Made by a program: the position numbers and the translations under genes. A stretch of DNA of 63,967 nt, counting the filler, from Octopus bimaculoides (Eukaryota), in assembly GCF_001194135.2 (NCBI RefSeq). It is 5 parts of 5 records of this genome, joined end to end, with 100 filler letters (N's around TTAATTAATTAA, not from the genome) between each part and the next. Parts side by side here need not be neighbours in the genome. Positions count along the whole stretch, not along the records: positions 1 to 30,024 come from NC_068993.1; 4 more parts are not named here. One strand, 5' to 3'. Numbering within the stretch: position 1 is the first letter of the stretch; each line of letters starts with the position of its first letter. The notes beneath the pieces are model-generated. The model was not told where the DNA came from and ran no database searches. It worked only from the letters and a program-made list of their open reading frames with translations. Positions 1,961 through 29,773 of this stretch are shown here, piece by piece.

Positions 1961-2128
1961 AGGCGCATGGGTTGTTCTGTGGTAAAAAAAGCTTGCTTAA
2001 CAACCCCATGGTTCCGGGTTCAGTCCCACTGTGTGGCACCTTGGGAAAGTGTCTTCTACTATAGCCTTAGACCGAATAAAGCCTTGTGAGTGGATTGGGT
2101 AGACGGAAACTGAAAGAAGCCCGTCGTA
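1961..2128 (+). mobile_element. SINE family A, 5' half (tRNA-like head plus body), followed by microsatellite
   Basis: A-box-like GTGGTAA, B-box-like GGGTTCAGTCCC; body GTGAGTGGATT..GTAGACGGAAACTGAAAGAAGCCCGTCG recurs at ~3510, 7520, 30325 and (minus) 46110. Confidence 0.8.
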
Positions 2129-2133
2129 TATTA

Positions 2134-2196
<63 letters not shown>

Positions 2197-2424
2197 AGCT
2201 CTGTGTGTGTGTAGCAAGCAGTTTTTTTTTATAGAAAGTTGAAATCCTACATGAACCTTTCATGGGCACACGGTTTTTCANNNNNNNNNNCAACAAAGCG
2301 CAGAATAAGAGATAAAAGGAAAGGAAGACAAATCAAAAGAAAGATGATATAATGAAAAATTTAATGAAAAAACAAAAAAAAGAGAGTCAAGTAAAACTCT
2401 TGAATCTTCGACCAAAATATAAAT

Positions 2425-2585: not shown

Positions 2586-3391
2586 AAAAAAAAAAAAAAA
2601 AAAAAATCCGGCATTGAATTTCGTGAGACAATTCACTGGCATATCACTCGTCTCTCAGGAAAAATAACAACGGAGATTTCTGAGTTTGGCAACACGCCTG
2701 ATTCTATCGAGAACATTTCGAAGTTGTTTCAACTGACATCAGTAGCTGCTGAATGAAAGAAAGATCAACTCCGACGGGATTTGAACTCAGGAAATTAAAC
2801 ATGCTGCAAGAAAATCTATCTAATCAAACAATCTTCCTTTTCCTACCACTTGACCAGCTTAAGTTTCTGCGACTGAGATTATTCCATGAATAAATTATTA
2901 TTCCTATATTTCTTAAGATGAATGAGATTTTTGGCTTTGTATTTAATTAAGTCTGTTATACTCTCGTATTAAAACGGATAGGAGATATTAAATAAATCTC
3001 TTCCTTGTGGAGGACGCCAGTTTATTTGTTCAACCGTTTGAACTCTTTGCATGATTATTCGCCGATACAGACCATCGAAAGTTTCTGCGAACTCTGCTGT
3101 TTCATTATTGCAGAATATAGTCGCCATTCAACATTTATAGCCTGAGGAAGCTGTATATTCACAACAATGCATGTTTTAAGAAACAGATAAAATGGTGGCG
3201 CTCGTCTCTTCTCTGGGTGTGTTTGGCAGTCGGCCAAAAACTCCTCTGCTTTTTGACGGGTAATATTTTTAGCTCCATTAGGTACATACACAATCTTGAT
3301 AATAAACTAGGTGCTTAATTGAGCGGGGGCTAGTCGACCCTGAAACAGAGTAACGAGATAGATCGAACCAGATGAGGCTGTATGTATATGC

Positions 3392-3775
3392 AGGCGTTGT
3401 TGTGTGGTAAGAGATTTGCTTTCCAACCACATGGATACGGTTTCAGTTGCATTGTGTGGCAACTTAGACAAGTACCTTTAACTATAACCTCGGCCCGACA
3501 AAGCATTGTGAGTGAATTTGGTAGACGGAAACTGAAAGAAGCCTGTTGATATCTATGTATCGTGTGTGTGTGCATGTGTCTGTGTGTGTCCCCACTATAC
3601 CGCTTGAAAATCGGTATTGGTTTGTTTGCAACCCCGTAACTTCACGGTCCGGCATAAGAGTCCGATAGAATAAATACAAGGTTTTTTTTTTTTAAGTGCT
3701 GGGGTCGATTCATTCGACTAAAATTGTTCAAGGCCGTGCTCCAGCATGATCGCAGTCTAGAAACCGAAAGACAGG
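3392..3775 (+). mobile_element. SINE family A, near full length (head, central TG tract, tail)
   Basis: Colinear with the other A copies; tail GGGGTCGATTCATTCGACT..GTGCTCCAGCATG. Confidence 0.8.
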
Positions 3776-4855: not shown

Positions 4856-4960
4856 TTGTCCCCCCAACATTGCTTGGCAACCGATGGTTGTGTGTTGAAA
4901 CATCAATTTTAGAGTCTGAATATATACTTCCTTCTTTCAATTACTTTTACTAATTTTTTT

Positions 4961-7395: not shown

Positions 7396-7563
7396 GGCGC
7401 AGGAGTGGTTGTGTGGTAAGTAGCATGCTAACCAACCACATGGCTCCGAGTTCAGTCCCATGGCGTGACACCTTGTGTAAGTGACTTCTACGATAGCCTC
7501 GGGTCGACCAAAGTCTTGTGAGTGGATTTGGTAGACGGAAACTGAAAGAAGTCCGTTGTATGT
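7396..7563 (+). mobile_element. SINE family A, 5' half (interrupted by CR1-like LINE)
   Basis: GGCGCAGGAGTGGTTGTGTGGTAAG head, GAGTTCAGTCCC B-box-like motif, family A body. Confidence 0.85.
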
Positions 7564-7975
7564 AAACAGGAATACCCGCACGGGTCGCCACTGCATGGTG
7601 CCAAAGGTACCGTCCACTGCATCTCACATAAGAACGAGATACTGCAGCAGCCTCGGTTTCAGAGGACCTCAGCTCTTCAATGCCCTGCCAAAACATTTGA
7701 GAGACATGCAAGACATGGATGCGGAGGTCTTCAAGACAAAACTTGACGCTTTCCTCTCCACGATACCAGATGAACCAATGGCTCGTAATGAGACGCAGTT
7801 TAGGGCAGCTATGTCAAATTCTCTTATACACCAGATGTGCCATCAAAACTCTTGATTGGACCATGTCAGGTGGGGGAAAAGAGCCATGCAAGGAACGTGA
7901 AAATCACGGTGGTGCACCAGCATGACCGCAGCCACTTGGCTGAAACACATAAATAAATAAATAAATAAATAAAAT
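7564..7975 (+). mobile_element. 5'-truncated CR1-like LINE 3' end: ORF2 C-terminus (stop 7853-7855), 3' UTR, (TAAA)n tail
   Basis: Translation RTGRHCMVP..GPQLFNALPKHLRDM..FKTKLDAFLSTIPDEP..RAAMSNSL matches the post-RT C-terminal motif of CR1-group LINEs. Confidence 0.8.
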
Positions 7976-7977
7976 AC

Positions 7978-8017
<40 letters not shown>

Positions 8018-8019
<2 letters not shown>

Positions 8020-8205
8020 TCGTCCACCTCCATCACTTGACAACCGACGCAGGTGTGTATACGTCCCCGTAACTTAGCGGTTCGGCATAAGCGAACGATA
8101 GAATAAGTACCTGGCTTACAAATAATAAGTCCTGGGGTCGATTTGTTCAACTAAAAGTTGTGCTCCAGCATGGCCGCTGTCAAATGACTGAAACAAGTAA
8201 GTAAA
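8018..8205 (+). mobile_element. SINE family A, 3' half
   Basis: CTTGACAACCGA..CCCCGTAACTTAGCGGTTCGGC..GATAGAATAAGTAC..GCTCCAGCATGGCC..TGACTGAAACAAGTAA, colinear with 17050-17240. Confidence 0.85.
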
Positions 8206-8245: not shown

Positions 8246-8500
8246 TCTATGTATTTATGTATAGGCATCTACATACGTAGAAATGTTCTATATGTTTATA
8301 TGAATATATTACGTTACCTATATTTTTATGCGTGTGTACACCTGTAATTAATATATCTATGTGCGAGTGTCAGTTTGTATGGCAGGTGTGATTATAACAA
8401 CGGAGAACATTGTTTTTCATTGTTTATTCACAATTTCCATTCAACGACGAATACAATAGAACAAGAAAGTGCTACTACTGATCCGATTGGACCATACCGA

Positions 8501-8564
<64 letters not shown>

Positions 8565-9966
8565 GAGAGAGGTGGCTGAGAAGTGTGGCGTATACTTATC
8601 TATGTATATTCTTCCGACTTTTATACGATAACTCTTTCCAAGTAACTACTTGTGATTGAATGAGTCTTTTTTCTCCCAAAGCGTACACGCTGTTGCGGAG
8701 ATGGTTCATAGTATTTCAAACTAAAATCGTTTCATGAAGAAAGGTGTGATGAAATTTGTACATTATAGCTTTGTTTTCTAAACAACTATTGTCATTTCTA
8801 TTTTAATCGAGATCGAAAGGGAGACATAGAGAAAACAGTTCTAAGAAAGACAACAGCTATCAAGAGAGATCTGAACAGAAGATAGGGAGAAAAGGATAGA
8901 CAGAAGGCCACGGAGAGAAACAAAGGGAGACAGGGTAAGAAGAGAGAGAGAGAGAGAGAGAGAGTGAGAGAATGAGAGAAAAAGAGGGAGAGAGAAGGGA
9001 GAAAAGGGGAGATAAGTAGATTGAGACAGAGAGAGTGTGACAAAAAAGCGATTGGTGGTGATAGAAAGAGACAGGTTTCCGGAAATGAAATGTGGTTTTC
9101 TGAATTATATCTCAAGGGGTAGACAAGAATAGGCAATATCTTAATTGAAAATCCGGTTTAATAATATCGATCGGTTAACTATGAAGATGGGAATGTAGAG
9201 TGTGGAGCTGCAGTTTGGGGCGAAGGTATATGGGAGTTGGGAGGAATTTGTTGGATATGGGGTGATGGTAAGGGTTAGATGGGTCTCGTTTCTATCTGAC
9301 CCCTACATAGACATAATATGAGAATTCTTCGCTTCACTGGTGTAGTCTTGAGTTTAGGGGATACACACTTATATACATACACACACACACACACTAACAT
9401 ATATATAACAAATATACACATATATATATATACACACACATATATATATACATATATATATATAATATACATACATACATATATATNNNNNNNNNNNNNN
9501 NNNNNNNNNNNNNNNNNNNNNNNNNNNNNNNNNNNNNNNNNNNNNNNNNNNNNNNNNNNNNNNNNNNNNNNNNNNNNNNNNNNNNNNNNNNNNNNNNNNN
9601 NNNNNNNNNNNNNNNNNNNNNNNNNNNNNNNNNNNNNNNNNNNNNNNNNNNNNNNNNNNNNNNNNNNNNNNNNNNNNNNNNNNNNNNNNNNNNNNNNNNN
9701 NNNNNNNNNNNNNNNNNNNNNNNNNNNNNNNNNNNNNNNNNNNNNNNNNNNNNNNNNNNNNNNNNNNNNNNNNNNNNNNNNNNNNNNNNNNNNNNNNNNN
9801 NNNNNNNNNNNNNNNNNNNNNNNNNNNNNNNNNNNNNNNNNNNNNNNNNNNNNNNNNNNNNNNNNNNNNNNNNNNNNNNNNNNNNNNNNNNNNNNNNNNN
9901 NNNNNNNNNNNNNNNNNNNNNNNNNNNNNNNNNNNNNNNNNNNNNNNNNNNNNNNNNNNNNNNNNN

Positions 9967-10002
<36 letters not shown>

Positions 10003-11426
10003 ACACACACACACAAAGAGAAAAAGGGGATTGATGTATACACAAATGGATGGAGTTAGATGTTGAAATTTAATCAATGTGTATTCATATAAATCGTACG
10101 CACACACACGCATTTCTTATTTTCATTTACGTGTGTATATGTGTGCGTGCGTGCGTGTGTGTGTGTTTGTATGCTTGTGTATGCATACAAGCGAGAAAAG
10201 TGTTCTATAATGCGTACGTAAGTGCGCATAGGTGTGAAGCTTGTATGCTTTTAGAGTCTAAAGTATAAATCTGAAAGGAATTTCTTCAGTTGCTTCATAA
10301 AGTGTGCAACTCTGAAACTCAAGAAGAACCAAACGAATACAAGAATAAAGAACAGACAAGAAAAGAAGGAAAAAAATACAATCAATTCTTCGATTGTTGG
10401 CCGAGTACCCAAAGGTTAGTGAAGTTTGTGTTTTCCTGTTGTTATTTTTGGGATAGCAATGAAGTCAAAAAGGAGATCGTTAGGAGCCACTTCAACCAAT
10501 GAGGAATTGTTTTGAAAGATATCCAGACACTCTTGTAAAATATGAAAACTCACTCATCCTCCCTTTGTTTTCCTCTCCCTTTCTCTCATCGGCATTTCTC
10601 TCCCTATCTCAATCTTGTTCTCTCTCCCTGTCTTCTTCTCTTTATTTCTCTAAATCTTTACTGTTCTTTCTTTCTCTCTCTTCTGTCTTTCACACCGTGT
10701 AGGTTCTAATATTTCTTTATTATTTCCTCCTCGTGTGGTCTTTCAGGAAGAAATTCCTCCCAAACTTATTCGGCAGCTGCTTCTGTTAAAAAGACAAATT
10801 AATTAAATAGAAAGATTTAAATTGGTAGCATAATGGCGAGAGATGAAACCAGATGAAACCAGACGGAAGCAGATGGCCTGGCCCGGTCAAATATCGGTCA
10901 TTTAAGATGGCACTTGAAAATTTGGGCGATGACTTTTGTTGATATTAAGTTAGGGAGAAATTTACCTTTTTCTTTTCAGTAAATGATCATGAAATCTTCT
11001 GGAAAATCTAAAAACTTATTTAAACATGGCTGTATGATTAAGAATTGTGCTTCGTAACTACATAGTTCTGTGTTCGATTCCACCAATGTAAGAGATTAAA
11101 TATATACAGAACCGCTGACAAGGGCGGAAACTGAGTATCACTATACAAAATATACTTCTTTTCACTTCTCAACTCTTAAGCGCTTCGTAATAACTAAAAC
11201 TATCAAAAAATTCTATCATAAATATTTTTTTAAAAATTAAGAAAAGAATTCCTGCTATGGTGATGGAACAATAATCAACGGAACAGCATGTAAAGACAAC
11301 TTTATTTGCATATTTCCGACACATTCGAACGTACATATGCTAGCCGCTGCTGTGTCCGTCACAAGAGAACAACTTGTTTAAGACGACTATGTTTTTATAA
11401 TACAGTCGCTTCATTAGGGCAAAGAA

Positions 11427-14981: not shown

Positions 14982-15659
14982 NNNNNNNNNNNNNNNNNNN
15001 NNNNNNNNNNNNNNNNNNNNNNNNNNNNNNNNNNNNNNNNNNNNNNNNNNNNNNNNNNNNNNNNNNNNNNNNNNNNNNNNNNNNNNNNNNNNNNNNNNNN
15101 NNNNNNNNNNNNNNNNNNNNNNNNNNNNNNNNNNNNNNNNNNNNNNNNNNNNNNNNNNNNNNNNNNNNNNNNNNNNNNNNNNNNNNNNNNNNNNNNNNNN
15201 NNNNNNNNNNNNNNNNNNNNNNNNNNNNNNNNNNNNNNNNNNNNNNNNNNNNNNNNNNNNNNNNNNNNNNNNNNNNNNNNNNNNNNNNNNNNNNNNNNNN
15301 NNNNNNNNNNNNNNNNNNNNNNNNNNNNNNNNNNNNNNNNNNNNNNNNNNNNNNNNNNNNNNNNNNNNNNNNNNNNNNNNNNNNNNNNNNNNNNNNNNNN
15401 NNNNNNNNNNNNNNNNNNNNNNNNNNNNNNNNNNNNNNNNNNNNNNNNNNNNNNNNNNNNNNNNNNNNNNNNNNNNNNNNNNNNNNNNNNNNNNNNNNNN
15501 NNNNNNNNNNNNNNNNNNNNNNNNNNNNNNNNNNNNNNNNNNNNNNNNNNNNNNNNNNNNNNNNNNNNNNNNNNNNNNNNNNNNNNNNNNNNNNNNNNNN
15601 NNNNNNNNNNNNNNNNNNNNNNNNNNNNNNNNNNNNNNNNNNNNNNNNNNNNNNNNNNN

Positions 15660-15745
<86 letters not shown>

Positions 15746-16272
15746 TGTGTGTGTGTATGTATGAATGTTTGTACGTATGTGTGAAATTTAATATATTCAA
15801 AAAATACATTTGTGAACTGTGAATTGAGACGCTTGCTTTCTAAACACATTGTATCGAGTCACACTTGTCCAAGGTACCATGCAGTGTGGTACTTAAGCCT
15901 CGGGCCGAACAAAGCACTGTGAGTGAATTTGGTAGGAGGAAACCTCAATCATGCGGTCGCGTGCTCAACACTTTAAACATAGAGCCAACTGCCTTCACAA
16001 GGATAAAATGACCTCGTGCAAACTGATATGAATTTATAGGACACCTCGAGTCTTAAAGCCTCGCTCAGTATTCTATGGGCAGAAAAAACCGTTTTCACAG
16101 GAGGATTGGAACACCCCGCCTCTAAAACTGATTTAGCTACACAAAAGTGCACAATGAGACGTGTGAGGTATAAATACTGCTTGAAGGCGGAGAGATAAAC
16201 TTTCAATTGAGTCTCAGATGTAAGTTACTGGATTTTTGGTGATGAGGTTTTGTGCCGCGACGTTATAATATT

Positions 16273-16483: not shown

Positions 16484-17009
16484 TGTAGCTATGTAATCTA
16501 TTCATAAGCTGTCCGTTTAAATAGAAACGCTTTCTCAGATATATGTTATTTTCTCTCTCTCATCCCCCTCTCTCTCTCTCTCTTTCTATATATTAGTGGG
16601 TGAATATTAATGTATGTATATATGTACNNNNNNNNNNNNNNNNNNNNNNNNNNNNNNNNNNNNNNNNNNNNNNNNNNNNNNNNNNNNNNNNNNNNNNNNN
16701 NNNNNNNNNNNNNNNNNNNNNNNNNNNNNNNNNNNNNNNNNNNNNNNNNNNNNNNNNNNNNNNNNNNNNNNNNNNNNNNNNNNNNNNNNNNNNNNNNNNN
16801 NNNNNNNNNNNNNNNNNNNNNNNNNNNNNNNNNNNNNNNNNNNNNNNNNNNNNNNNNNNNNNNNNNNNNNNNNNNNNNNNNNNNNNNNNNNNNNNNNNNN
16901 NNNNNNNNNNNNNNNNNNNNNNNNNNNNNNNNNNNNNNNNNNNNNNNNNNNNNNNNNNNNNNNNNNNNNNNNNNNNNNNNNNNNNNNNNNNNNNNNNNNT
17001 ATATGTATG

Positions 17010-17049: not shown

Positions 17050-17242
17050 TGTTTGTCCCCCCCAACATCGCTTGACAACCGATGCTGGTGTGTTTACGTC
17101 CCCGTAACTTAGCGGTTCGGCAAAAGAGACCGATAGAATAAGTACTAGGCTTACAAAGAATAAGTCGTGGGGTCGATTTGCTCGACTAAAAGGCGGTGCT
17201 CCAGCATGGCCACAGTCAAATGACTGAAACAAGTAAAAGAAA
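17050..17242 (+). mobile_element. SINE family A, 3' half (head probably in the preceding gap)
   Basis: Least diverged A tail; ends GGCGGTGCTCCAGCATGGCCACAGTCAAATGACTGAAACAAGTAAAAG. Confidence 0.85.
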
Positions 17243-17898: not shown

Positions 17899-18079
17899 NN
17901 NNNNNNNNNNNNNNNNNNNNNNNNNNNNNNNNNNNNNNNNNNNNNNNNNNNNNNNNNNNNNNNNNNNNNNNNNNNNNNNNNNNNNNNNNNNNNNNNATGC
18001 ACACACACACACAAACATATCTAATATATTTAAATATATATAAATGTGTGTATAGCACACGCAGGTATATTTATATCTA

Positions 18080-22834: not shown

Positions 22835-23005
22835 ACGTGGCTGTGTGGTAAAGAAGCTTGCTTTGCAATCACGTGGTTTGGAGCTCAGTCCCGCTGCACG
22901 GCACTTTGGGATTGTCTCTTCTACTATAGCTCCGAGCCAACTAATATCGTGCGAGTACATTTGGTCGGCGGAGACTGTGTGGAAGCCCATCTTATATACA
23001 CATCA
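22835..23005 (+). mobile_element. SINE family A head (variant)
   Basis: GTGGCTGTGTGGTAAAGAAGCTTGCTT..GCTCAGTCCCGCTGC..CTTCTACTATAGC. Confidence 0.75.
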
Positions 23006-24522: not shown

Positions 24523-25905
24523 ATTTTAGGGAGAACGAGAGAGAGAGAGAGAGAGAGAGGGGTGGAGAAATAAGTAAGAAATAAAGAAACAAAGAGTGCA
24601 GTCATTTTGGTTTTGATTTGAAAGGAATTTAATCGGCCATTTTTATAGCTTCCAGCATTGGCGATGTTTTCAATATTTGCAACAGAACGGACACCGCTAA
24701 AACCTCTCAAGAGTTAAGCCGAGCAACGATCTAAATTGATTCTAGTACACGTCTTCATTCAACTCACCACAGAAACCTCTTTGAGTACACTTAATCTGTT
24801 ATAAAGAATAGCAAAATTCTCTTTAAACTACAATCCAGTGTCTTTATATAAAACAAGAAGGAGATGAAGCATTTATGTTGTATTGCCGGATATACAAAAT
24901 AAATGTGTTGGGAGGAATTCTTTGGGGTTTGAATAATTCAACTTTGGAAACATGGGTGTTTTGCTCAACATCCTTCAACAAACCCTATTTAGGGACCTTT
25001 TGAGCGGGTTGGGCTACTTGACCTGAAGAAAATTCTAACTGGGCCCCACCTGCGAGGTCGTGCGCTGTTTATCTTCATTAGAGATCACTATGTCGCGCAT
25101 ATATGGTTGTGATGCATGTGCTTGGTGTAACCTTATCAGACGGGTAGTATATTTTACCCCAGTGTCACTTTGATGGCATGCACTGCTCTCTCGCTCAATA
25201 ATAATAATAATAATAATAATAGTAATGATAATAACACCTTACTCAATTTTATATATATATATACATATCTCTCTACCTCTCTATATACACGTACATATGT
25301 AAGTATTTATATATATATANNNNNNNNNNNNNNNNNNNNNNNNNNNNNNNNNNNNNNNNNNNNNNNNNNNNNNNNNNNNNNNNNNNNNNNNNNNNNNNNN
25401 NNNNNNNNNNNNNNNNNNNNNNNNNNNNNNNNNNNNNNNNNNNNNNNNNNNNNNNNNNNNNNNNNNNNNNNNNNNNNNNNNNNNNNNNNNNNNNNNNNNN
25501 NNNNNNNNNNNNNNNNNNNNNNNNNNNNNNNNNNNNNNNNNNNNNNNNNNNNNNNNNNNNNNNNNNNNNNNNNNNNNNNNNNNNNNNNNNNNNNNNNNNN
25601 NNNNNNNNNNNNNNNNNNNNNNNNNNNNNNNNNNNNNNNNNNNNNNNNNNNNNNNNNNNNNNNNNNNNNNNNNNNNNNNNNNNNNNNNNNNNNNNNNNNN
25701 NNNNNNNNNNNNNNNNNNNNNNNNNNNNNNNNNNNNNNNNNNNNNNNNNNNNNNNNNNNNNNNNNNNNNNNNNNNNNNNNNNNNNNNNNNNNNNNNNNNN
25801 NNNNNNNNNNNNNNNNNNNNNNNNNNNNNNNNNNNNNNNNNNNNNNNNNNNNNNNNNNNNNNNNNNNNNNNNNNNNNNNNNNNNNNNNNNNNNNNNNNNN
25901 NNNNN

Positions 25906-25944
<39 letters not shown>

Positions 25945-26377
25945 TATATATATACACACACACACACATGCATACATATACGTACACAGACAAAAACACA
26001 CACAGTGTCCAATGTATCTTTGTATGATGATGGTGCAGTATGATTTGAAGGAGATCATGATGACTGCTATTTCTAGCCTTTCAAAAAGCCACGTAGAGAT
26101 CCCTTAGTGGTTTGTTGAGAATTGTTGCTAATATTAAAGGATGAAGCTGAAAATTGCATGATTGGAAGCCCGAAGTGTTTTCATACGCATAAAAAAAAAA
26201 AAGAAAAAATAAAGAAATGGAGAAAATATGATAAAATGGCTTCGGAAACCAAACACATCCTAGTTTTAAAACCTCCAACAAATAAAATGTCCCACTTGTT
26301 GACCTAACTCTAGATAAACACAACAAACAATTTTAGCTAGAAAAAAATACGAAGATATATATGTATGTATATGTATA

Positions 26378-29207: not shown

Positions 29208-29711
29208 TACAGATGACAGGACGTCAAAATTGTTAGGGCTCCAGGCAAAATAGCGTGCGTTGTTTCAGAAAATTATGTTCTGACTTCAAATCCGACCGAG
29301 AGCAGATTATCGCTTATCTCTGTGGGCATGATAATAAACATACCAGTTAAGCATAGGGGTCAAACTGTAGTTGCTAAACGGATAGTTATACACGTTACCT
29401 GGAAGTATTTCAATATGAAATTACATTTGATAACATATCTAGGGTACATGGGCGACATAGCCACCTCGCAATAATTCTTATCACACCGATGTACATTCAA
29501 CAAATCGCAGTGGCACACGTGTATACACGTAGCTATATGCATGTCTAAAAATCACCTCACAACCACAGTGGTCTGAATCTCGTTGAAATAGATTATGTAC
29601 TCTAAAACATGTATTGAGTTCCCCATCCTCATCGGTTCGCCACACTTCAGCGATTAAATACAATATCTATATATATGCATACGTATGTATGCATGTATAT
29701 GTGTATGTGTG

Positions 29712-29773
<62 letters not shown>

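What the first reader, a model, noticed from the sequence alone, without database searches (positions are those of the whole stretch)
7908..7947. LINE and SINE A share a covarying 3' double hairpin (candidate partner pair)
Seen: the CR1-like 3' UTR end GGTGGTGCACCAGCATGACCGCAGCCACTTGGCTGAAACA aligns without gaps, 32/40, to the SINE A end at 17192-17231 (GGCGGTGCTCCAGCATGGCCACAGTCAAATGACTGAAACA). All 8 differences fit two hairpins (positions 1-20 and 22-35). Positions 3/18 are T-A versus C-G, positions 25/32 are C-G versus T-A, three changes are in loops and one is in the linker. Established: many tRNA-derived SINEs carry a LINE 3' tail whose stem-loop is recognised by CR1/L2-type reverse transcriptases. 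Inference: this CR1-like family, or a close relative, mobilises SINE A and the hairpins are the recognition signal. I cannot tell whether this pair has been described.
Basis: partly seen in the sequence, partly recalled or inferred. Interest (0 to 1): 0.75.

Follow-up and report, generated by a model that had tools for sequence, protein, structure and literature searches.

The report
Octopus LINE and SINE shared tail
A CR1-like jumping gene and a short parasitic repeat in an octopus genome end in the same 40-base two-hairpin RNA signal, an ordinary but well-supported new example of a SINE borrowing its LINE partner's 3' tail.

Summary
Window 7908-7947 and 17192-17231 match 32/40 without gaps. 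All eight differences are two compensated base pairs, three loop bases and one linker base.

The 40-mer is not a SINE piece fused to one LINE copy. It follows the ORF2 stop in nine LINE copies: this window, Octopus vulgaris, Argonauta hians (a near full-length EN+RT element) and six unidentified contigs. In two lineages it makes up almost the whole 3' UTR.

Every undecayed copy folds into the same two hairpins (z about -2.5 to -4.2; 94% of pair cells paired, against 23-48% in slid controls). Pair 3/18 occurs as U-A, U·G and C-G. Pair 25/32 is C-G in LINEs and U-A in SINE A. The hairpin-2 loop varies from 3 to 8 nt.

Three refinements:
- SINE A's tail fits sister LINE lineages (L004/L005) better than the window's own copy.
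- Covariation rests on only two pairs and 13 sequences.
- "SINE A" has no detectable tRNA head and usually lies downstream of a tRNA/CORE-like "SINE B", so it may be the 3' half of a composite SINE.

This is a new member of a known kind and of moderate-to-low interest.

The parts
7565..7855 (+). 5'-truncated C-terminal fragment of LINE ORF2 (…GRHCMVPKV…FNALPKHLRDM…STIPDEP…HQNS*), stop TGA at 7853-7855
   Evidence: Translation. It is 59-70% identical to the C-termini of LINE proteins P0001-P0006 and P0103. The longer relatives carry RVT_1.
7856..7907 (+). Lineage-specific upstream part of the LINE 3' UTR, not shared with SINE A or with other LINE lineages
   Evidence: The local alignment with SINE A stops at 7908. 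Other lineages have different or no sequence here.
7908..7927 (+). Hairpin 1: 3 bp, a 1x1 G·G mismatch, 4 bp (one of them G·U), and an ACCA tetraloop
   Evidence: MFE fold -18.8 kcal/mol, ensemble frequency 0.97, z -3.14. Pair counts.
7929..7942 (+). Hairpin 2: 5-bp stem CAGCC/GGCTG with loop ACTT
   Evidence: The loop is 3-8 nt in other lineages while the stem is kept.
7943..7976 (+). Single-stranded AAACA flank, then a short-period terminal repeat (AAATAAAT/ATAA)n. This is the LINE 3' end. (TA)n(TG)n follows.
   Evidence: AAAC follows hairpin 2 in all undecayed tails.
17053..17191 (+). SINE A body, reference copy; an assembly gap lies just upstream at 16628-16999
   Evidence: blastn family members in the window and in O. 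vulgaris locus L002.
17192..17231 (+). SINE A 3' double hairpin (C3-G18, U25-A32), followed by AGTAAAAGAAAAAG…
   Evidence: MFE fold identical in shape, -17.9 kcal/mol, z -3.62. Covariance-model score 64.7 bits.
8031..8195 (+). Second SINE A copy (about 89% identical); its tail is at 8156-8195, partly decayed
3590..3771 (+). Old SINE A copy (about 73% identical); its tail is at 3732-3771, decayed
4856..4896 (+). SINE A 5' fragment (41 nt) preceded by (TA)n(TG)n
7397..7562 (+). SINE B (tRNA-like head plus CORE-like body by eye) directly abutting the 5' end of the LINE fragment
   Evidence: blastn family with further copies at 1963-2129, 3390-3548, 22837-22977 and 15896-15943.
3390..3548 (+). 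SINE B copy lying 40 nt of (TG)n-rich sequence upstream of SINE A copy 3590-3771 (the B-microsatellite-A arrangement)

Best explanation
The 40-mer is the native 3'-terminal RNA module of a CR1-like family of octopod LINEs. The module has four parts: hairpin 1 (3 bp, a G·G mismatch, 4 bp, an NCCA tetraloop); a one-base linker; hairpin 2 (a 5-6 bp stem with a free loop of 3-8 nt); and a single-stranded AAAC followed by short terminal repeats of about 8 nt. SINE A carries a copy of this module taken from a LINE lineage close to L004/L005. By analogy with stringent-type LINEs, the LINE's ORF2 reverse transcriptase binds the module on its own transcript and starts target-primed reverse transcription in the terminal repeats. 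A SINE A transcript that presents the same module is then copied in trans. What is shown here: the shared sequence, its position at the 3' end of both elements, its presence behind ORF2 in many LINE lineages, and a fold that is kept through compensated changes. What is inferred: binding by the RT, mobilisation in trans, and which bases are contacted. The invariant upper stem GUGC/GCAU, the CCA of the loop, the G·G mismatch and the AAAC are the likely contact sites.
For: 1) Shared tail: 32/40 matches, with the 8 differences placed as described.
2) LINE-native. The module follows the ORF2 stop in the window (7908), L001, L002 (Octopus vulgaris OX597818.1), L004, L005, L006, L008, L012 and L009 (Argonauta hians). 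In L004 and L005 it begins 1-3 nt after the stop codon. L009 has Exo_endo_phos_2 and RVT_1 ORFs at 8308-11278 and then the module at 11306-11346.
3) Fold. Eight of the ten tails folded give (((.((((....)))).))) plus a second hairpin of 5-6 bp as the minimum-energy structure. The seven undecayed ones have ensemble frequency 0.85-0.98 and z from -2.5 to -4.2.
4) Pair counts. 93-94% of cells are paired, against 22-50% when partners are slid. Pair 3/18 is UA:5 CG:5 UG:2; pair 25/32 is CG:7 UA:5 UG:1. Only 1-12 of 500 shuffles reach the observed value on the three measures that stand out (% of cells paired, cells changed on both sides, covariation score).
5) The covariance model recovers L004, which was held out of training, at 47 bits. 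It finds nothing else in about 99 kb.
6) A rough NJ tree of the ORF2 C-termini places C-G and U-A lineages intermixed. L006 (U·G) and L009 (U-A) are 93% identical in protein. This suggests repeated C-G -> U·G -> U-A changes.
7) More distant lineages L010 and L013 (about 45-50% aa identity to the window fragment) keep the architecture of hairpin 1 with different stem bases and a CCCA loop.
8) SINE A's hairpin 1 is 20/20 identical to L005. Its terminal AAGTAAAAGAATAA resembles the LINE tails of L002, L004 and L005.
9) A hairpin plus an octamer microsatellite is the described CR1 3' recognition architecture (PMC4316615, PMC8665684). SINE/LINE tail sharing is established and is predominant for the CR1 and RTE clades (PMC3747384).
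Against: There are only 13 tails (8 LINE, 5 SINE A), plus one further decayed LINE tail (L012) that the model did not score, and several are decayed genomic copies rather than consensus sequences. Only two pairs covary. The U25-A32 state is probably one event inherited by all SINE A copies. Five of the twelve pairs barely or never vary, so they say nothing either way. The shuffle control is known to be permissive for related sequences. The two count-of-pairs measures do not exceed the shuffles (216-276 and 496-497 of 500). The tree rests on about 96 residues with no support values. No RT phylogeny places the LINE in the CR1 clade. ARAGORN and Rfam find no tRNA-like head in SINE A. No experiment or expression data were available.
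Confidence: 0.8

Rival explanations
1. The partner of SINE A is not the LINE subfamily seen in the window. It is a sister lineage (L004/L005-like, C3-G18, TCCA/CCCA loop, AAAAGAAT-type terminal repeats). The window copy is only a cousin that shares the ancestral module.
For: Hairpin 1 identity to SINE A is 20/20 for L005 and 19/20 for L004, against 17/20 for the window LINE. SINE A ends in AAGTAAAAGAA(T)AA, like L002, L004 and L005, whereas the window LINE ends in (ATAA)n.
Against: No LINE sampled has the U25-A32 pair of SINE A. The source organisms of L004 and L005 are not identified (a fragmented NCBI assembly, GCA_024449705.1, and an ENA metagenome). A stringent RT may tolerate this much divergence, so several lineages could all mobilise SINE A.
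Confidence: 0.6
2. 'SINE A' is not a self-standing SINE. It is the 3' half of a composite element: SINE B (tRNA-like head and CORE-like body), then (TA)n(TG)n, then the A body, then the CR1-type tail. The whole is transcribed from B's Pol III promoter. A-only copies are 5'-truncated or rearranged.
For: Four of five full SINE A copies lie downstream of a same-strand SINE B. The intervening sequence is only microsatellite, or microsatellite plus an obvious later insertion. The cases are window 3390-3771, window 7397-8195, L002 7339-7744 and L002 12590-10993(-). The fifth copy has an assembly gap upstream. Divergences of the A and B parts are concordant across the four pairs. SINE A has about 55 nt upstream of its only A-box-like motif and no tRNA match. 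SINE B's own 3' end has no consistent hairpin.
Against: There are only four pairs. At least one SINE B copy is followed by microsatellite and then unrelated DNA (window 1963-2129). The A head at 4856 has microsatellite but no B upstream. The same pattern would arise if A (and the LINE) insert preferentially into the (TA)n/(TG)n tails of B.
Confidence: 0.5
3. The conserved 40-mer is recognised as primary sequence only. The hairpins are incidental and the 'compensatory' changes are coincidence or hitch-hiking.
For: Most stem positions are invariant, so they are uninformative. Only two pairs covary, and the number of covarying pairs is not above the shuffles.
Against: Hairpin 2 keeps its stem while its loop changes in length (3-8 nt) and sequence. 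L004 and L009 each extend the stem by one further canonical pair. U·G intermediates occur at both covarying pairs. L010 and L013 keep hairpin 1's shape with different stem bases. The chance of keeping 12/12 pairs after 8 random changes is at most 2.7%.
Confidence: 0.08
4. The 40-mer at 7908 is a piece of a SINE A copy fused to this one LINE fragment (nested insertion or assembly chimera), or the LINE family captured its tail from the SINE.
For: The LINE fragment lies in a repeat-dense stretch between SINE B and another SINE A copy.
Against: Nine independent LINE copies carry the module behind ORF2. One is from Argonauta hians, where no SINE A body was found in 21 kb. Related hairpin 1 is present in LINE lineages about 45-50% identical in protein. 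No SINE A body sequence precedes the module in any LINE.
Confidence: 0.02

Closest known systems
Amniote CR1 LINEs and their SINE partners (for example tortoise Pol III/SINE-CR1, and the passerine SINEs said to be CR1-mobilised)
   Same: A single ORF2 with an APE-type endonuclease and an RT. No poly(A). The 3' UTR ends in a conserved hairpin followed by a short microsatellite of about 8 nt that is thought to be the RT recognition site. SINEs copy that tail (PMC4316615, PMC8665684, PMC3747384).
   Different: Here there are two adjacent hairpins, a conserved NCCA tetraloop and a G·G mismatch. The terminal repeats are A/T-rich ((AAAAGAAT)n, (ATTAAAAC)n, (AAATAAAT)n) rather than ATTCTRTG. The host is a cephalopod. 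Clade membership by RT phylogeny was not tested.
UnaL2/UnaSINE1 (eel) and the ZfL2 (zebrafish) stringent-type L2 elements
   Same: This is the experimentally proven model in which the LINE's ORF2 protein recognises a 3' stem-loop, the SINE with the same tail is mobilised in trans, and terminal short repeats are needed for initiation (PMC4176376; Kajikawa and Okada 2002, as cited in PMC3747384).
   Different: Those elements use a single stem-loop with, as I recall it, a conserved GGAUA-type loop, and 5-mer repeats such as TGTAA. The octopod module has two hairpins and different loops. There is no experimental evidence here.
Octopus SINE families OK, OR1 and OR2 (Ohshima and Okada 1994), and the 'tRNA-Core' and 'tRNA-Deu' SINE classes of octopus genome annotations
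   Same: Abundant octopus-specific SINEs. SINE B looks like a tRNA/CORE SINE by eye. SINE A may correspond to the other main class (PMC8967140, PMC4758252).
   Different: I could not obtain those consensus sequences, so identity with SINE A or SINE B is untested. No held paper names a LINE partner or a 3' hairpin for them.

Membership tests
SINE/LINE pair with a common 3' tail (stringent type) | The 3' end of the SINE is homologous to the 3' end of a LINE in the same genome | tested here: met
   32/40 in the window. The same holds in O. vulgaris locus L002: LINE tail at 10477, SINE A tails at 7705 and 11032(-). The covariance model finds both classes at E <= 1e-12.
SINE/LINE pair with a common 3' tail (stringent type) | The shared region is the true 3' terminus of full-length LINEs, not of one aberrant copy | tested here: met
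   Nine LINE copies carry it. L009 (Argonauta hians) has EN and RT ORFs followed by the module.
SINE/LINE pair with a common 3' tail (stringent type) | Both elements end in the same short terminal repeats | tested here: inconclusive
   SINE A ends in AAGTAAAAGAA(T)AA…, which resembles the LINE tails of L002, L004 and L005. The window LINE ends in (ATAA)n instead. There are too few copies for a consensus.
SINE/LINE pair with a common 3' tail (stringent type) | The SINE has an internal Pol III promoter head (tRNA, 5S or 7SL derived) | tested here: not met
   For SINE A alone, ARAGORN finds none and Rfam gives no tRNA, 5S or 7SL match even at E <= 10. By eye there are only weak A-box and B-box-like motifs, preceded by a 55-nt leader. 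The upstream SINE B may supply the head (see the composite model), but Rfam also fails on SINE B.
SINE/LINE pair with a common 3' tail (stringent type) | The LINE protein mobilises the SINE through the tail | not testable with these tools
   This needs a retrotransposition assay.
CR1-clade LINE | ORF2 with an N-terminal APE-type endonuclease and an RT | tested here: met
   L009 8308-9522 matches Exo_endo_phos_2 (3.8e-12). L009 9830-11278 matches RVT_1 (4.8e-32).
CR1-clade LINE | 3' UTR hairpin followed by a microsatellite of about 8 nt, with no poly(A) | tested here: met
   Hairpins. The terminal repeats have a period of about 8 in L004, L005, L006, L009 and the window. Feature as described in PMC4316615 and PMC8665684.
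CR1-clade LINE | The RT groups with CR1 rather than with L2, Rex1, Jockey or others in a phylogeny with reference elements | not tested
   No reference LINE set (Repbase or Dfam) was available. The C-terminal motif …YSLERRRERY…IPDEP resembles the CR1/L2 group only from memory.
L2-clade UnaL2-type tail | A single stem-loop with a conserved GGAUA-like loop and 5-mer terminal repeats | tested here: not met
   There are two hairpins. The loops are NCCA and a variable loop of 3-8 nt.

The most novel reading that the evidence does not exclude
The two-hairpin module (NCCA tetraloop, a 1x1 purine mismatch, a second hairpin with a free loop, then AAAC) is an ancient recognition element of a protostome CR1-like lineage. 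It is distinct from the single stem-loops studied in vertebrate L2 and CR1 elements. In Octopus it drives a composite SINE (tRNA/CORE head, internal (TA)n(TG)n, A body, CR1 tail) that, like its LINE, integrates preferentially at TA/TG microsatellites. If so, the major octopus-specific SINE expansion is tied to one identifiable LINE machinery.
Probability: 0.25. Interest if true: 0.5.

Novelty: new member of a known kind. Interest (0 to 1): 0.3.

Why it matters
SINEs make up roughly 8-12% of Octopus genomes, and their expansion is specific to octopuses. Yet recent annotations leave most families as 'unclassified SINE', and the papers I could search name no LINE partner (PMC13282606, PMC8967140). 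Tying one abundant SINE to a CR1-like LINE family through a defined 40-nt RNA module has three uses. It gives a marker for classifying and dating these repeats. It gives a testable hypothesis for which machinery drove the expansion. It also provides a compact natural set of compensatory variants for testing how a stringent-type reverse transcriptase reads its template. The principle itself has been textbook knowledge since 1996-2002.

Tried and rejected
1) The repeat finder on the whole window was swamped by microsatellites and N runs. I replaced it with blastn.

2) DNA pattern scans for the tail. Metagenome contigs gave one chance bacterial hit, a histidine-kinase-like gene (L003). Genome contigs gave 0. 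Protein-pattern scans of genome contigs and viral contigs gave nothing. Alignment A3 was too diverse for that tool.

3) Rfam on the window produced only microsatellite artefacts (mir-297, mir-466 and similar). Rfam on SINE A and SINE B alone gave no tRNA, 5S or 7SL match. ARAGORN found 0 genes.

4) MAFFT misaligned the long loop of L004. I dropped L004 for alignment A5, then recovered it with the covariance-model alignment A7.

5) L007 (P0006) has no tail; the LINE C-terminus is joined to GC-rich sequence. L011 'does not translate to the query', and its two-hairpin reading is manual and weak (6 bits).

6) Literature. No held paper contains the SINE or LINE strings or Repbase-style octopus names. 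The Albertin 2015 paper and the SINEBase supplements are not held. Dfam and Repbase could not be consulted, so 'not described' is not established.

7) The chance and chimera explanations were considered and rejected (see rivals).

Full report
**Observation**

Window 7908-7947 (GGTGGTGCACCAGCATGACCGCAGCCACTTGGCTGAAACA) and 17192-17231 (GGCGGTGCTCCAGCATGGCCACAGTCAAATGACTGAAACA) read as quoted. They match 32/40 without gaps. The eight differences fall into four groups:

- positions 3 and 18: a T-A pair becomes C-G
- positions 25 and 32: a C-G pair becomes T-A
- positions 9, 28 and 29: loop bases
- position 21: the linker

A local alignment of the surrounding sequences extends only to 46 nt and begins exactly at position 1. 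So what is shared is a terminal module, not a longer stretch. The match is not chance. blastn gives E = 8e-6 inside the window. In a simulation, 8 random substitutions keep all 12 pairs in only 0.7-2.7% of trials.

**Anatomy of the locus**

The piece is AT-rich (36% G+C), full of (TA)n/(TG)n microsatellites, and has six assembly gaps. The 'LINE' is a severely 5'-truncated fragment with these parts:

- ORF2 homology starts near 7565 and ends at a TGA stop at 7853-7855.
- A 52-nt lineage-specific stretch of 3' UTR follows.
- Then comes the 40-mer, and after it (ATAA)n, (TA)n and (TG)n.
- Upstream, the fragment abuts a different repeat, SINE B (7397-7562). Downstream of the microsatellite lies another SINE A copy (8031-8195).

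SINE A has four copies in the window: 17053-17231, 8031-8195, 3590-3771 and a head fragment at 4856-4896. Three of them carry the tail.

**Is the 40-mer native to the LINE?**

Yes. Protein searches with the ORF2 C-terminus and look-ups of the encoding contigs gave eight more LINE copies. In each, the same module sits behind the stop codon.

| Locus | Source |
|---|---|
| L001 | ENA metagenome contig |
| L002 | Octopus vulgaris chromosome OX597818.1 |
| L004 | NCBI assembly GCA_024449705.1 |
| L005, L006 | ENA contigs |
| L008, L012 | Logan contigs (SRR11869390 and SRR11869391), decayed copies |
| L009 | Argonauta hians BAAFZT010000013.1 |

In L004 and L005 the module starts 1-3 nt after the stop codon. 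There the 3' UTR is essentially the module plus terminal repeats. In L009, ORFs matching Exo_endo_phos_2 (8308-9522) and RVT_1 (9830-11278) precede the module at 11306-11346. So a near full-length EN+RT element ends in it.

**Structure**

Eight of the ten tails folded give the same minimum-energy shape: (((.((((....)))).))) followed by a second hairpin of 5-6 bp. The other two are decayed copies: the L002 LINE tail takes that shape only as its centroid, and the L002 7705 SINE A tail keeps only 3 bp of hairpin 2. The seven undecayed tails have ensemble frequency 0.85-0.98 and z from -2.5 to -4.2 against dinucleotide shuffles; the decayed copies lose this.

Pair counts on a MAFFT alignment of 12 tails and on a covariance-model alignment of 13 tails agree:

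- 93.1% and 93.6% of pair cells are canonical, against 22-50% when the 3' partners are slid by 1-3 columns.
- Pair 3/18 occurs as U-A (5), C-G (5) and U·G (2).
- Pair 25/32 occurs as C-G (7), U-A (5) and U·G (1).
- For the share of cells paired, the number of cells changed on both sides and the covariation score, only 1-12 of 500 shuffles reach the observed value.
- The number of covarying pairs (2) and the count of further pair types are not above the shuffles.

Further support comes from three places. The hairpin-2 loop varies from 3 to 8 nt and in sequence while the stem is kept. L004 and L009 each add one more canonical pair. A covariance model trained without L004 recovers it at 47 bits and finds nothing else in about 99 kb.

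A rough NJ tree of the ORF2 C-termini intermixes C-G and U-A lineages. L006 (U·G) and L009 (U-A) are 93% identical in protein. This suggests several independent passages from C-G through U·G to U-A, the first step being a CpG transition. This is inference from a weak tree.

Two more distant lineages, L010 and L013 (about 45-50% aa identity to the window fragment), carry ACG-G-UGUAC-CCCA-GUACA-A-CGU. That is the same 3 bp, 1x1 mismatch, upper stem and NCCA-loop architecture, built from different stem bases.

Overall the fold is well supported. However, formal covariation rests on two pairs and few, partly decayed, non-independent sequences.

**Which LINE is the partner?**

SINE A's hairpin 1 is identical (20/20) to L005 and 19/20 to L004, but only 17/20 to the window LINE. 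SINE A's terminal AAGTAAAAGAA(T)AA resembles the LINE tails of L002, L004 and L005, not the window's (ATAA)n. The U25-A32 pair is specific to SINE A. The donor was therefore probably a sister lineage of the window copy.

**What is SINE A?**

ARAGORN and Rfam find no tRNA, 5S or 7SL similarity in it. By eye it has only weak A-box and B-box-like motifs, behind a 55-nt leader that an internal promoter could not transcribe.

Four of five full copies lie downstream of a same-strand SINE B. They are separated from it by (TA)n(TG)n alone, or by that plus an evident later insertion. In the window the insertion is the LINE fragment itself. In L002 it is 1.2 kb of MITE-like and Tc1-like sequence. The fifth copy has an assembly gap upstream. 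The divergences of the A and B parts agree across the four pairs. SINE B's own 3' end has no consistent hairpin.

Two readings remain open:

- A composite SINE: B head, internal microsatellite, A body, CR1 tail.
- Preferential insertion of A, and of the LINE, into TA/TG microsatellites such as B's tail.

Either way, the module at the end of A is the LINE-derived tail.

**Mechanism**

This part is inferred. As in stringent-type LINEs (PMC3747384, PMC4176376), ORF2p would bind the module on its own RNA and prime reverse transcription in the terminal repeats. SINE A RNA would compete through the same module. The invariant features are the likely contacts: GUGC/GCAU, the CCA of the loop, the G·G mismatch, CAG…CUG and AAAC. 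The hairpin-2 loop is evidently free to vary.

**Comparison with what is known, and novelty**

A hairpin plus an octamer microsatellite is the described CR1 3' architecture (PMC4316615, PMC8665684). SINE/LINE pairs are most common for the CR1 and RTE clades (PMC3747384). That review's table lists no mollusc pair. The octopus repeat papers I could read name no partner and leave 893 of the 900 recently active SINE families they tabulate unclassified (PMC13282606, PMC8967140). String and name searches found nothing. Dfam, Repbase and SINEBase could not be consulted.

I rate this a new member of a known kind. The finding is correct and tidy, and useful for octopus repeat annotation, but it would not surprise a specialist. 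Interest 0.3.

Noticed in passing
window 3390-3771 and 7397-8195; L002 7339-7744 and 12590-10993(-): SINE A is found downstream of a same-strand SINE B, with (TA)n(TG)n between them, in 4 of 5 full copies. The divergences of the A and B parts agree. This suggests either a composite B-A SINE or targeted insertion into B's microsatellite tail.
   Followed up: partly
window 7562/7563 and 7948-8030; 3' flanks of the tails in L001, L002 and L004: The LINE fragment sits exactly between the 3' end of SINE B and the microsatellite that precedes SINE A. Most LINE and SINE A tails are followed by (TA)n. Every SINE A 5' end is preceded by (TG)n and the motif TGTTTGTCCCC. This suggests microsatellite targeting, or microsatellite birth at the element ends.
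   Followed up: partly
L004 531-590, L005 735-790, L006/L009 tails, L010/L013 tails: The terminal repeats differ by lineage: (AAAAGAAT)n, (ATTAAAAC)n, (AATTAAAG)n, (AAATAAAT)n, and (TAAGTA)n in the distant lineages. In L004 and L005 the stop codon abuts hairpin 1, so the 3' UTR is only the module.
   Followed up: partly
protein P0008: A 94-aa fragment of this octopod LINE ORF2 is deposited as 'hypothetical protein, partial [Escherichia coli]' on a 563-bp contig. This is presumably animal DNA contaminating a bacterial assembly.
   Followed up: no
L007 940-1600: On an ENA metagenome contig, the LINE C-terminus is joined to GC-rich sequence that looks bacterial, with no 3' module. It is probably a chimeric assembly.
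   Followed up: no
L002 11180-12380 (minus strand): A MITE-like inverted repeat (…ccatgataaaactccgagttttgg… and its complement) and a Tc1/mariner-like helix-turn-helix fragment are inserted in the microsatellite between a SINE B and a SINE A.
   Followed up: no
window 2281-2290, 9487-9966, 14982-15659, 16628-16999, 17899-17996, 25320-25905: Six assembly gaps lie in this repeat-dense piece; where I read the flanking sequence (9487, 14982, 16628, 25320) it is (TA)n/(TG)n microsatellite. The gap at 16628-16999 hides what lies upstream of the reference SINE A copy. The repeat finder treats the N runs as long repeats.
   Followed up: no
window, many sites (for example 29684-29754, 25915-25985): Sub-threshold Rfam matches to mir-297, mir-466, mir-3149 and similar families all lie on TA/TG microsatellites and are artefacts.
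   Followed up: yes
L009 5207-7540: A second, different non-LTR element (a split RVT_1 and a weak zf-RVT match) lies just upstream of the CR1-like element in Argonauta hians.
   Followed up: no
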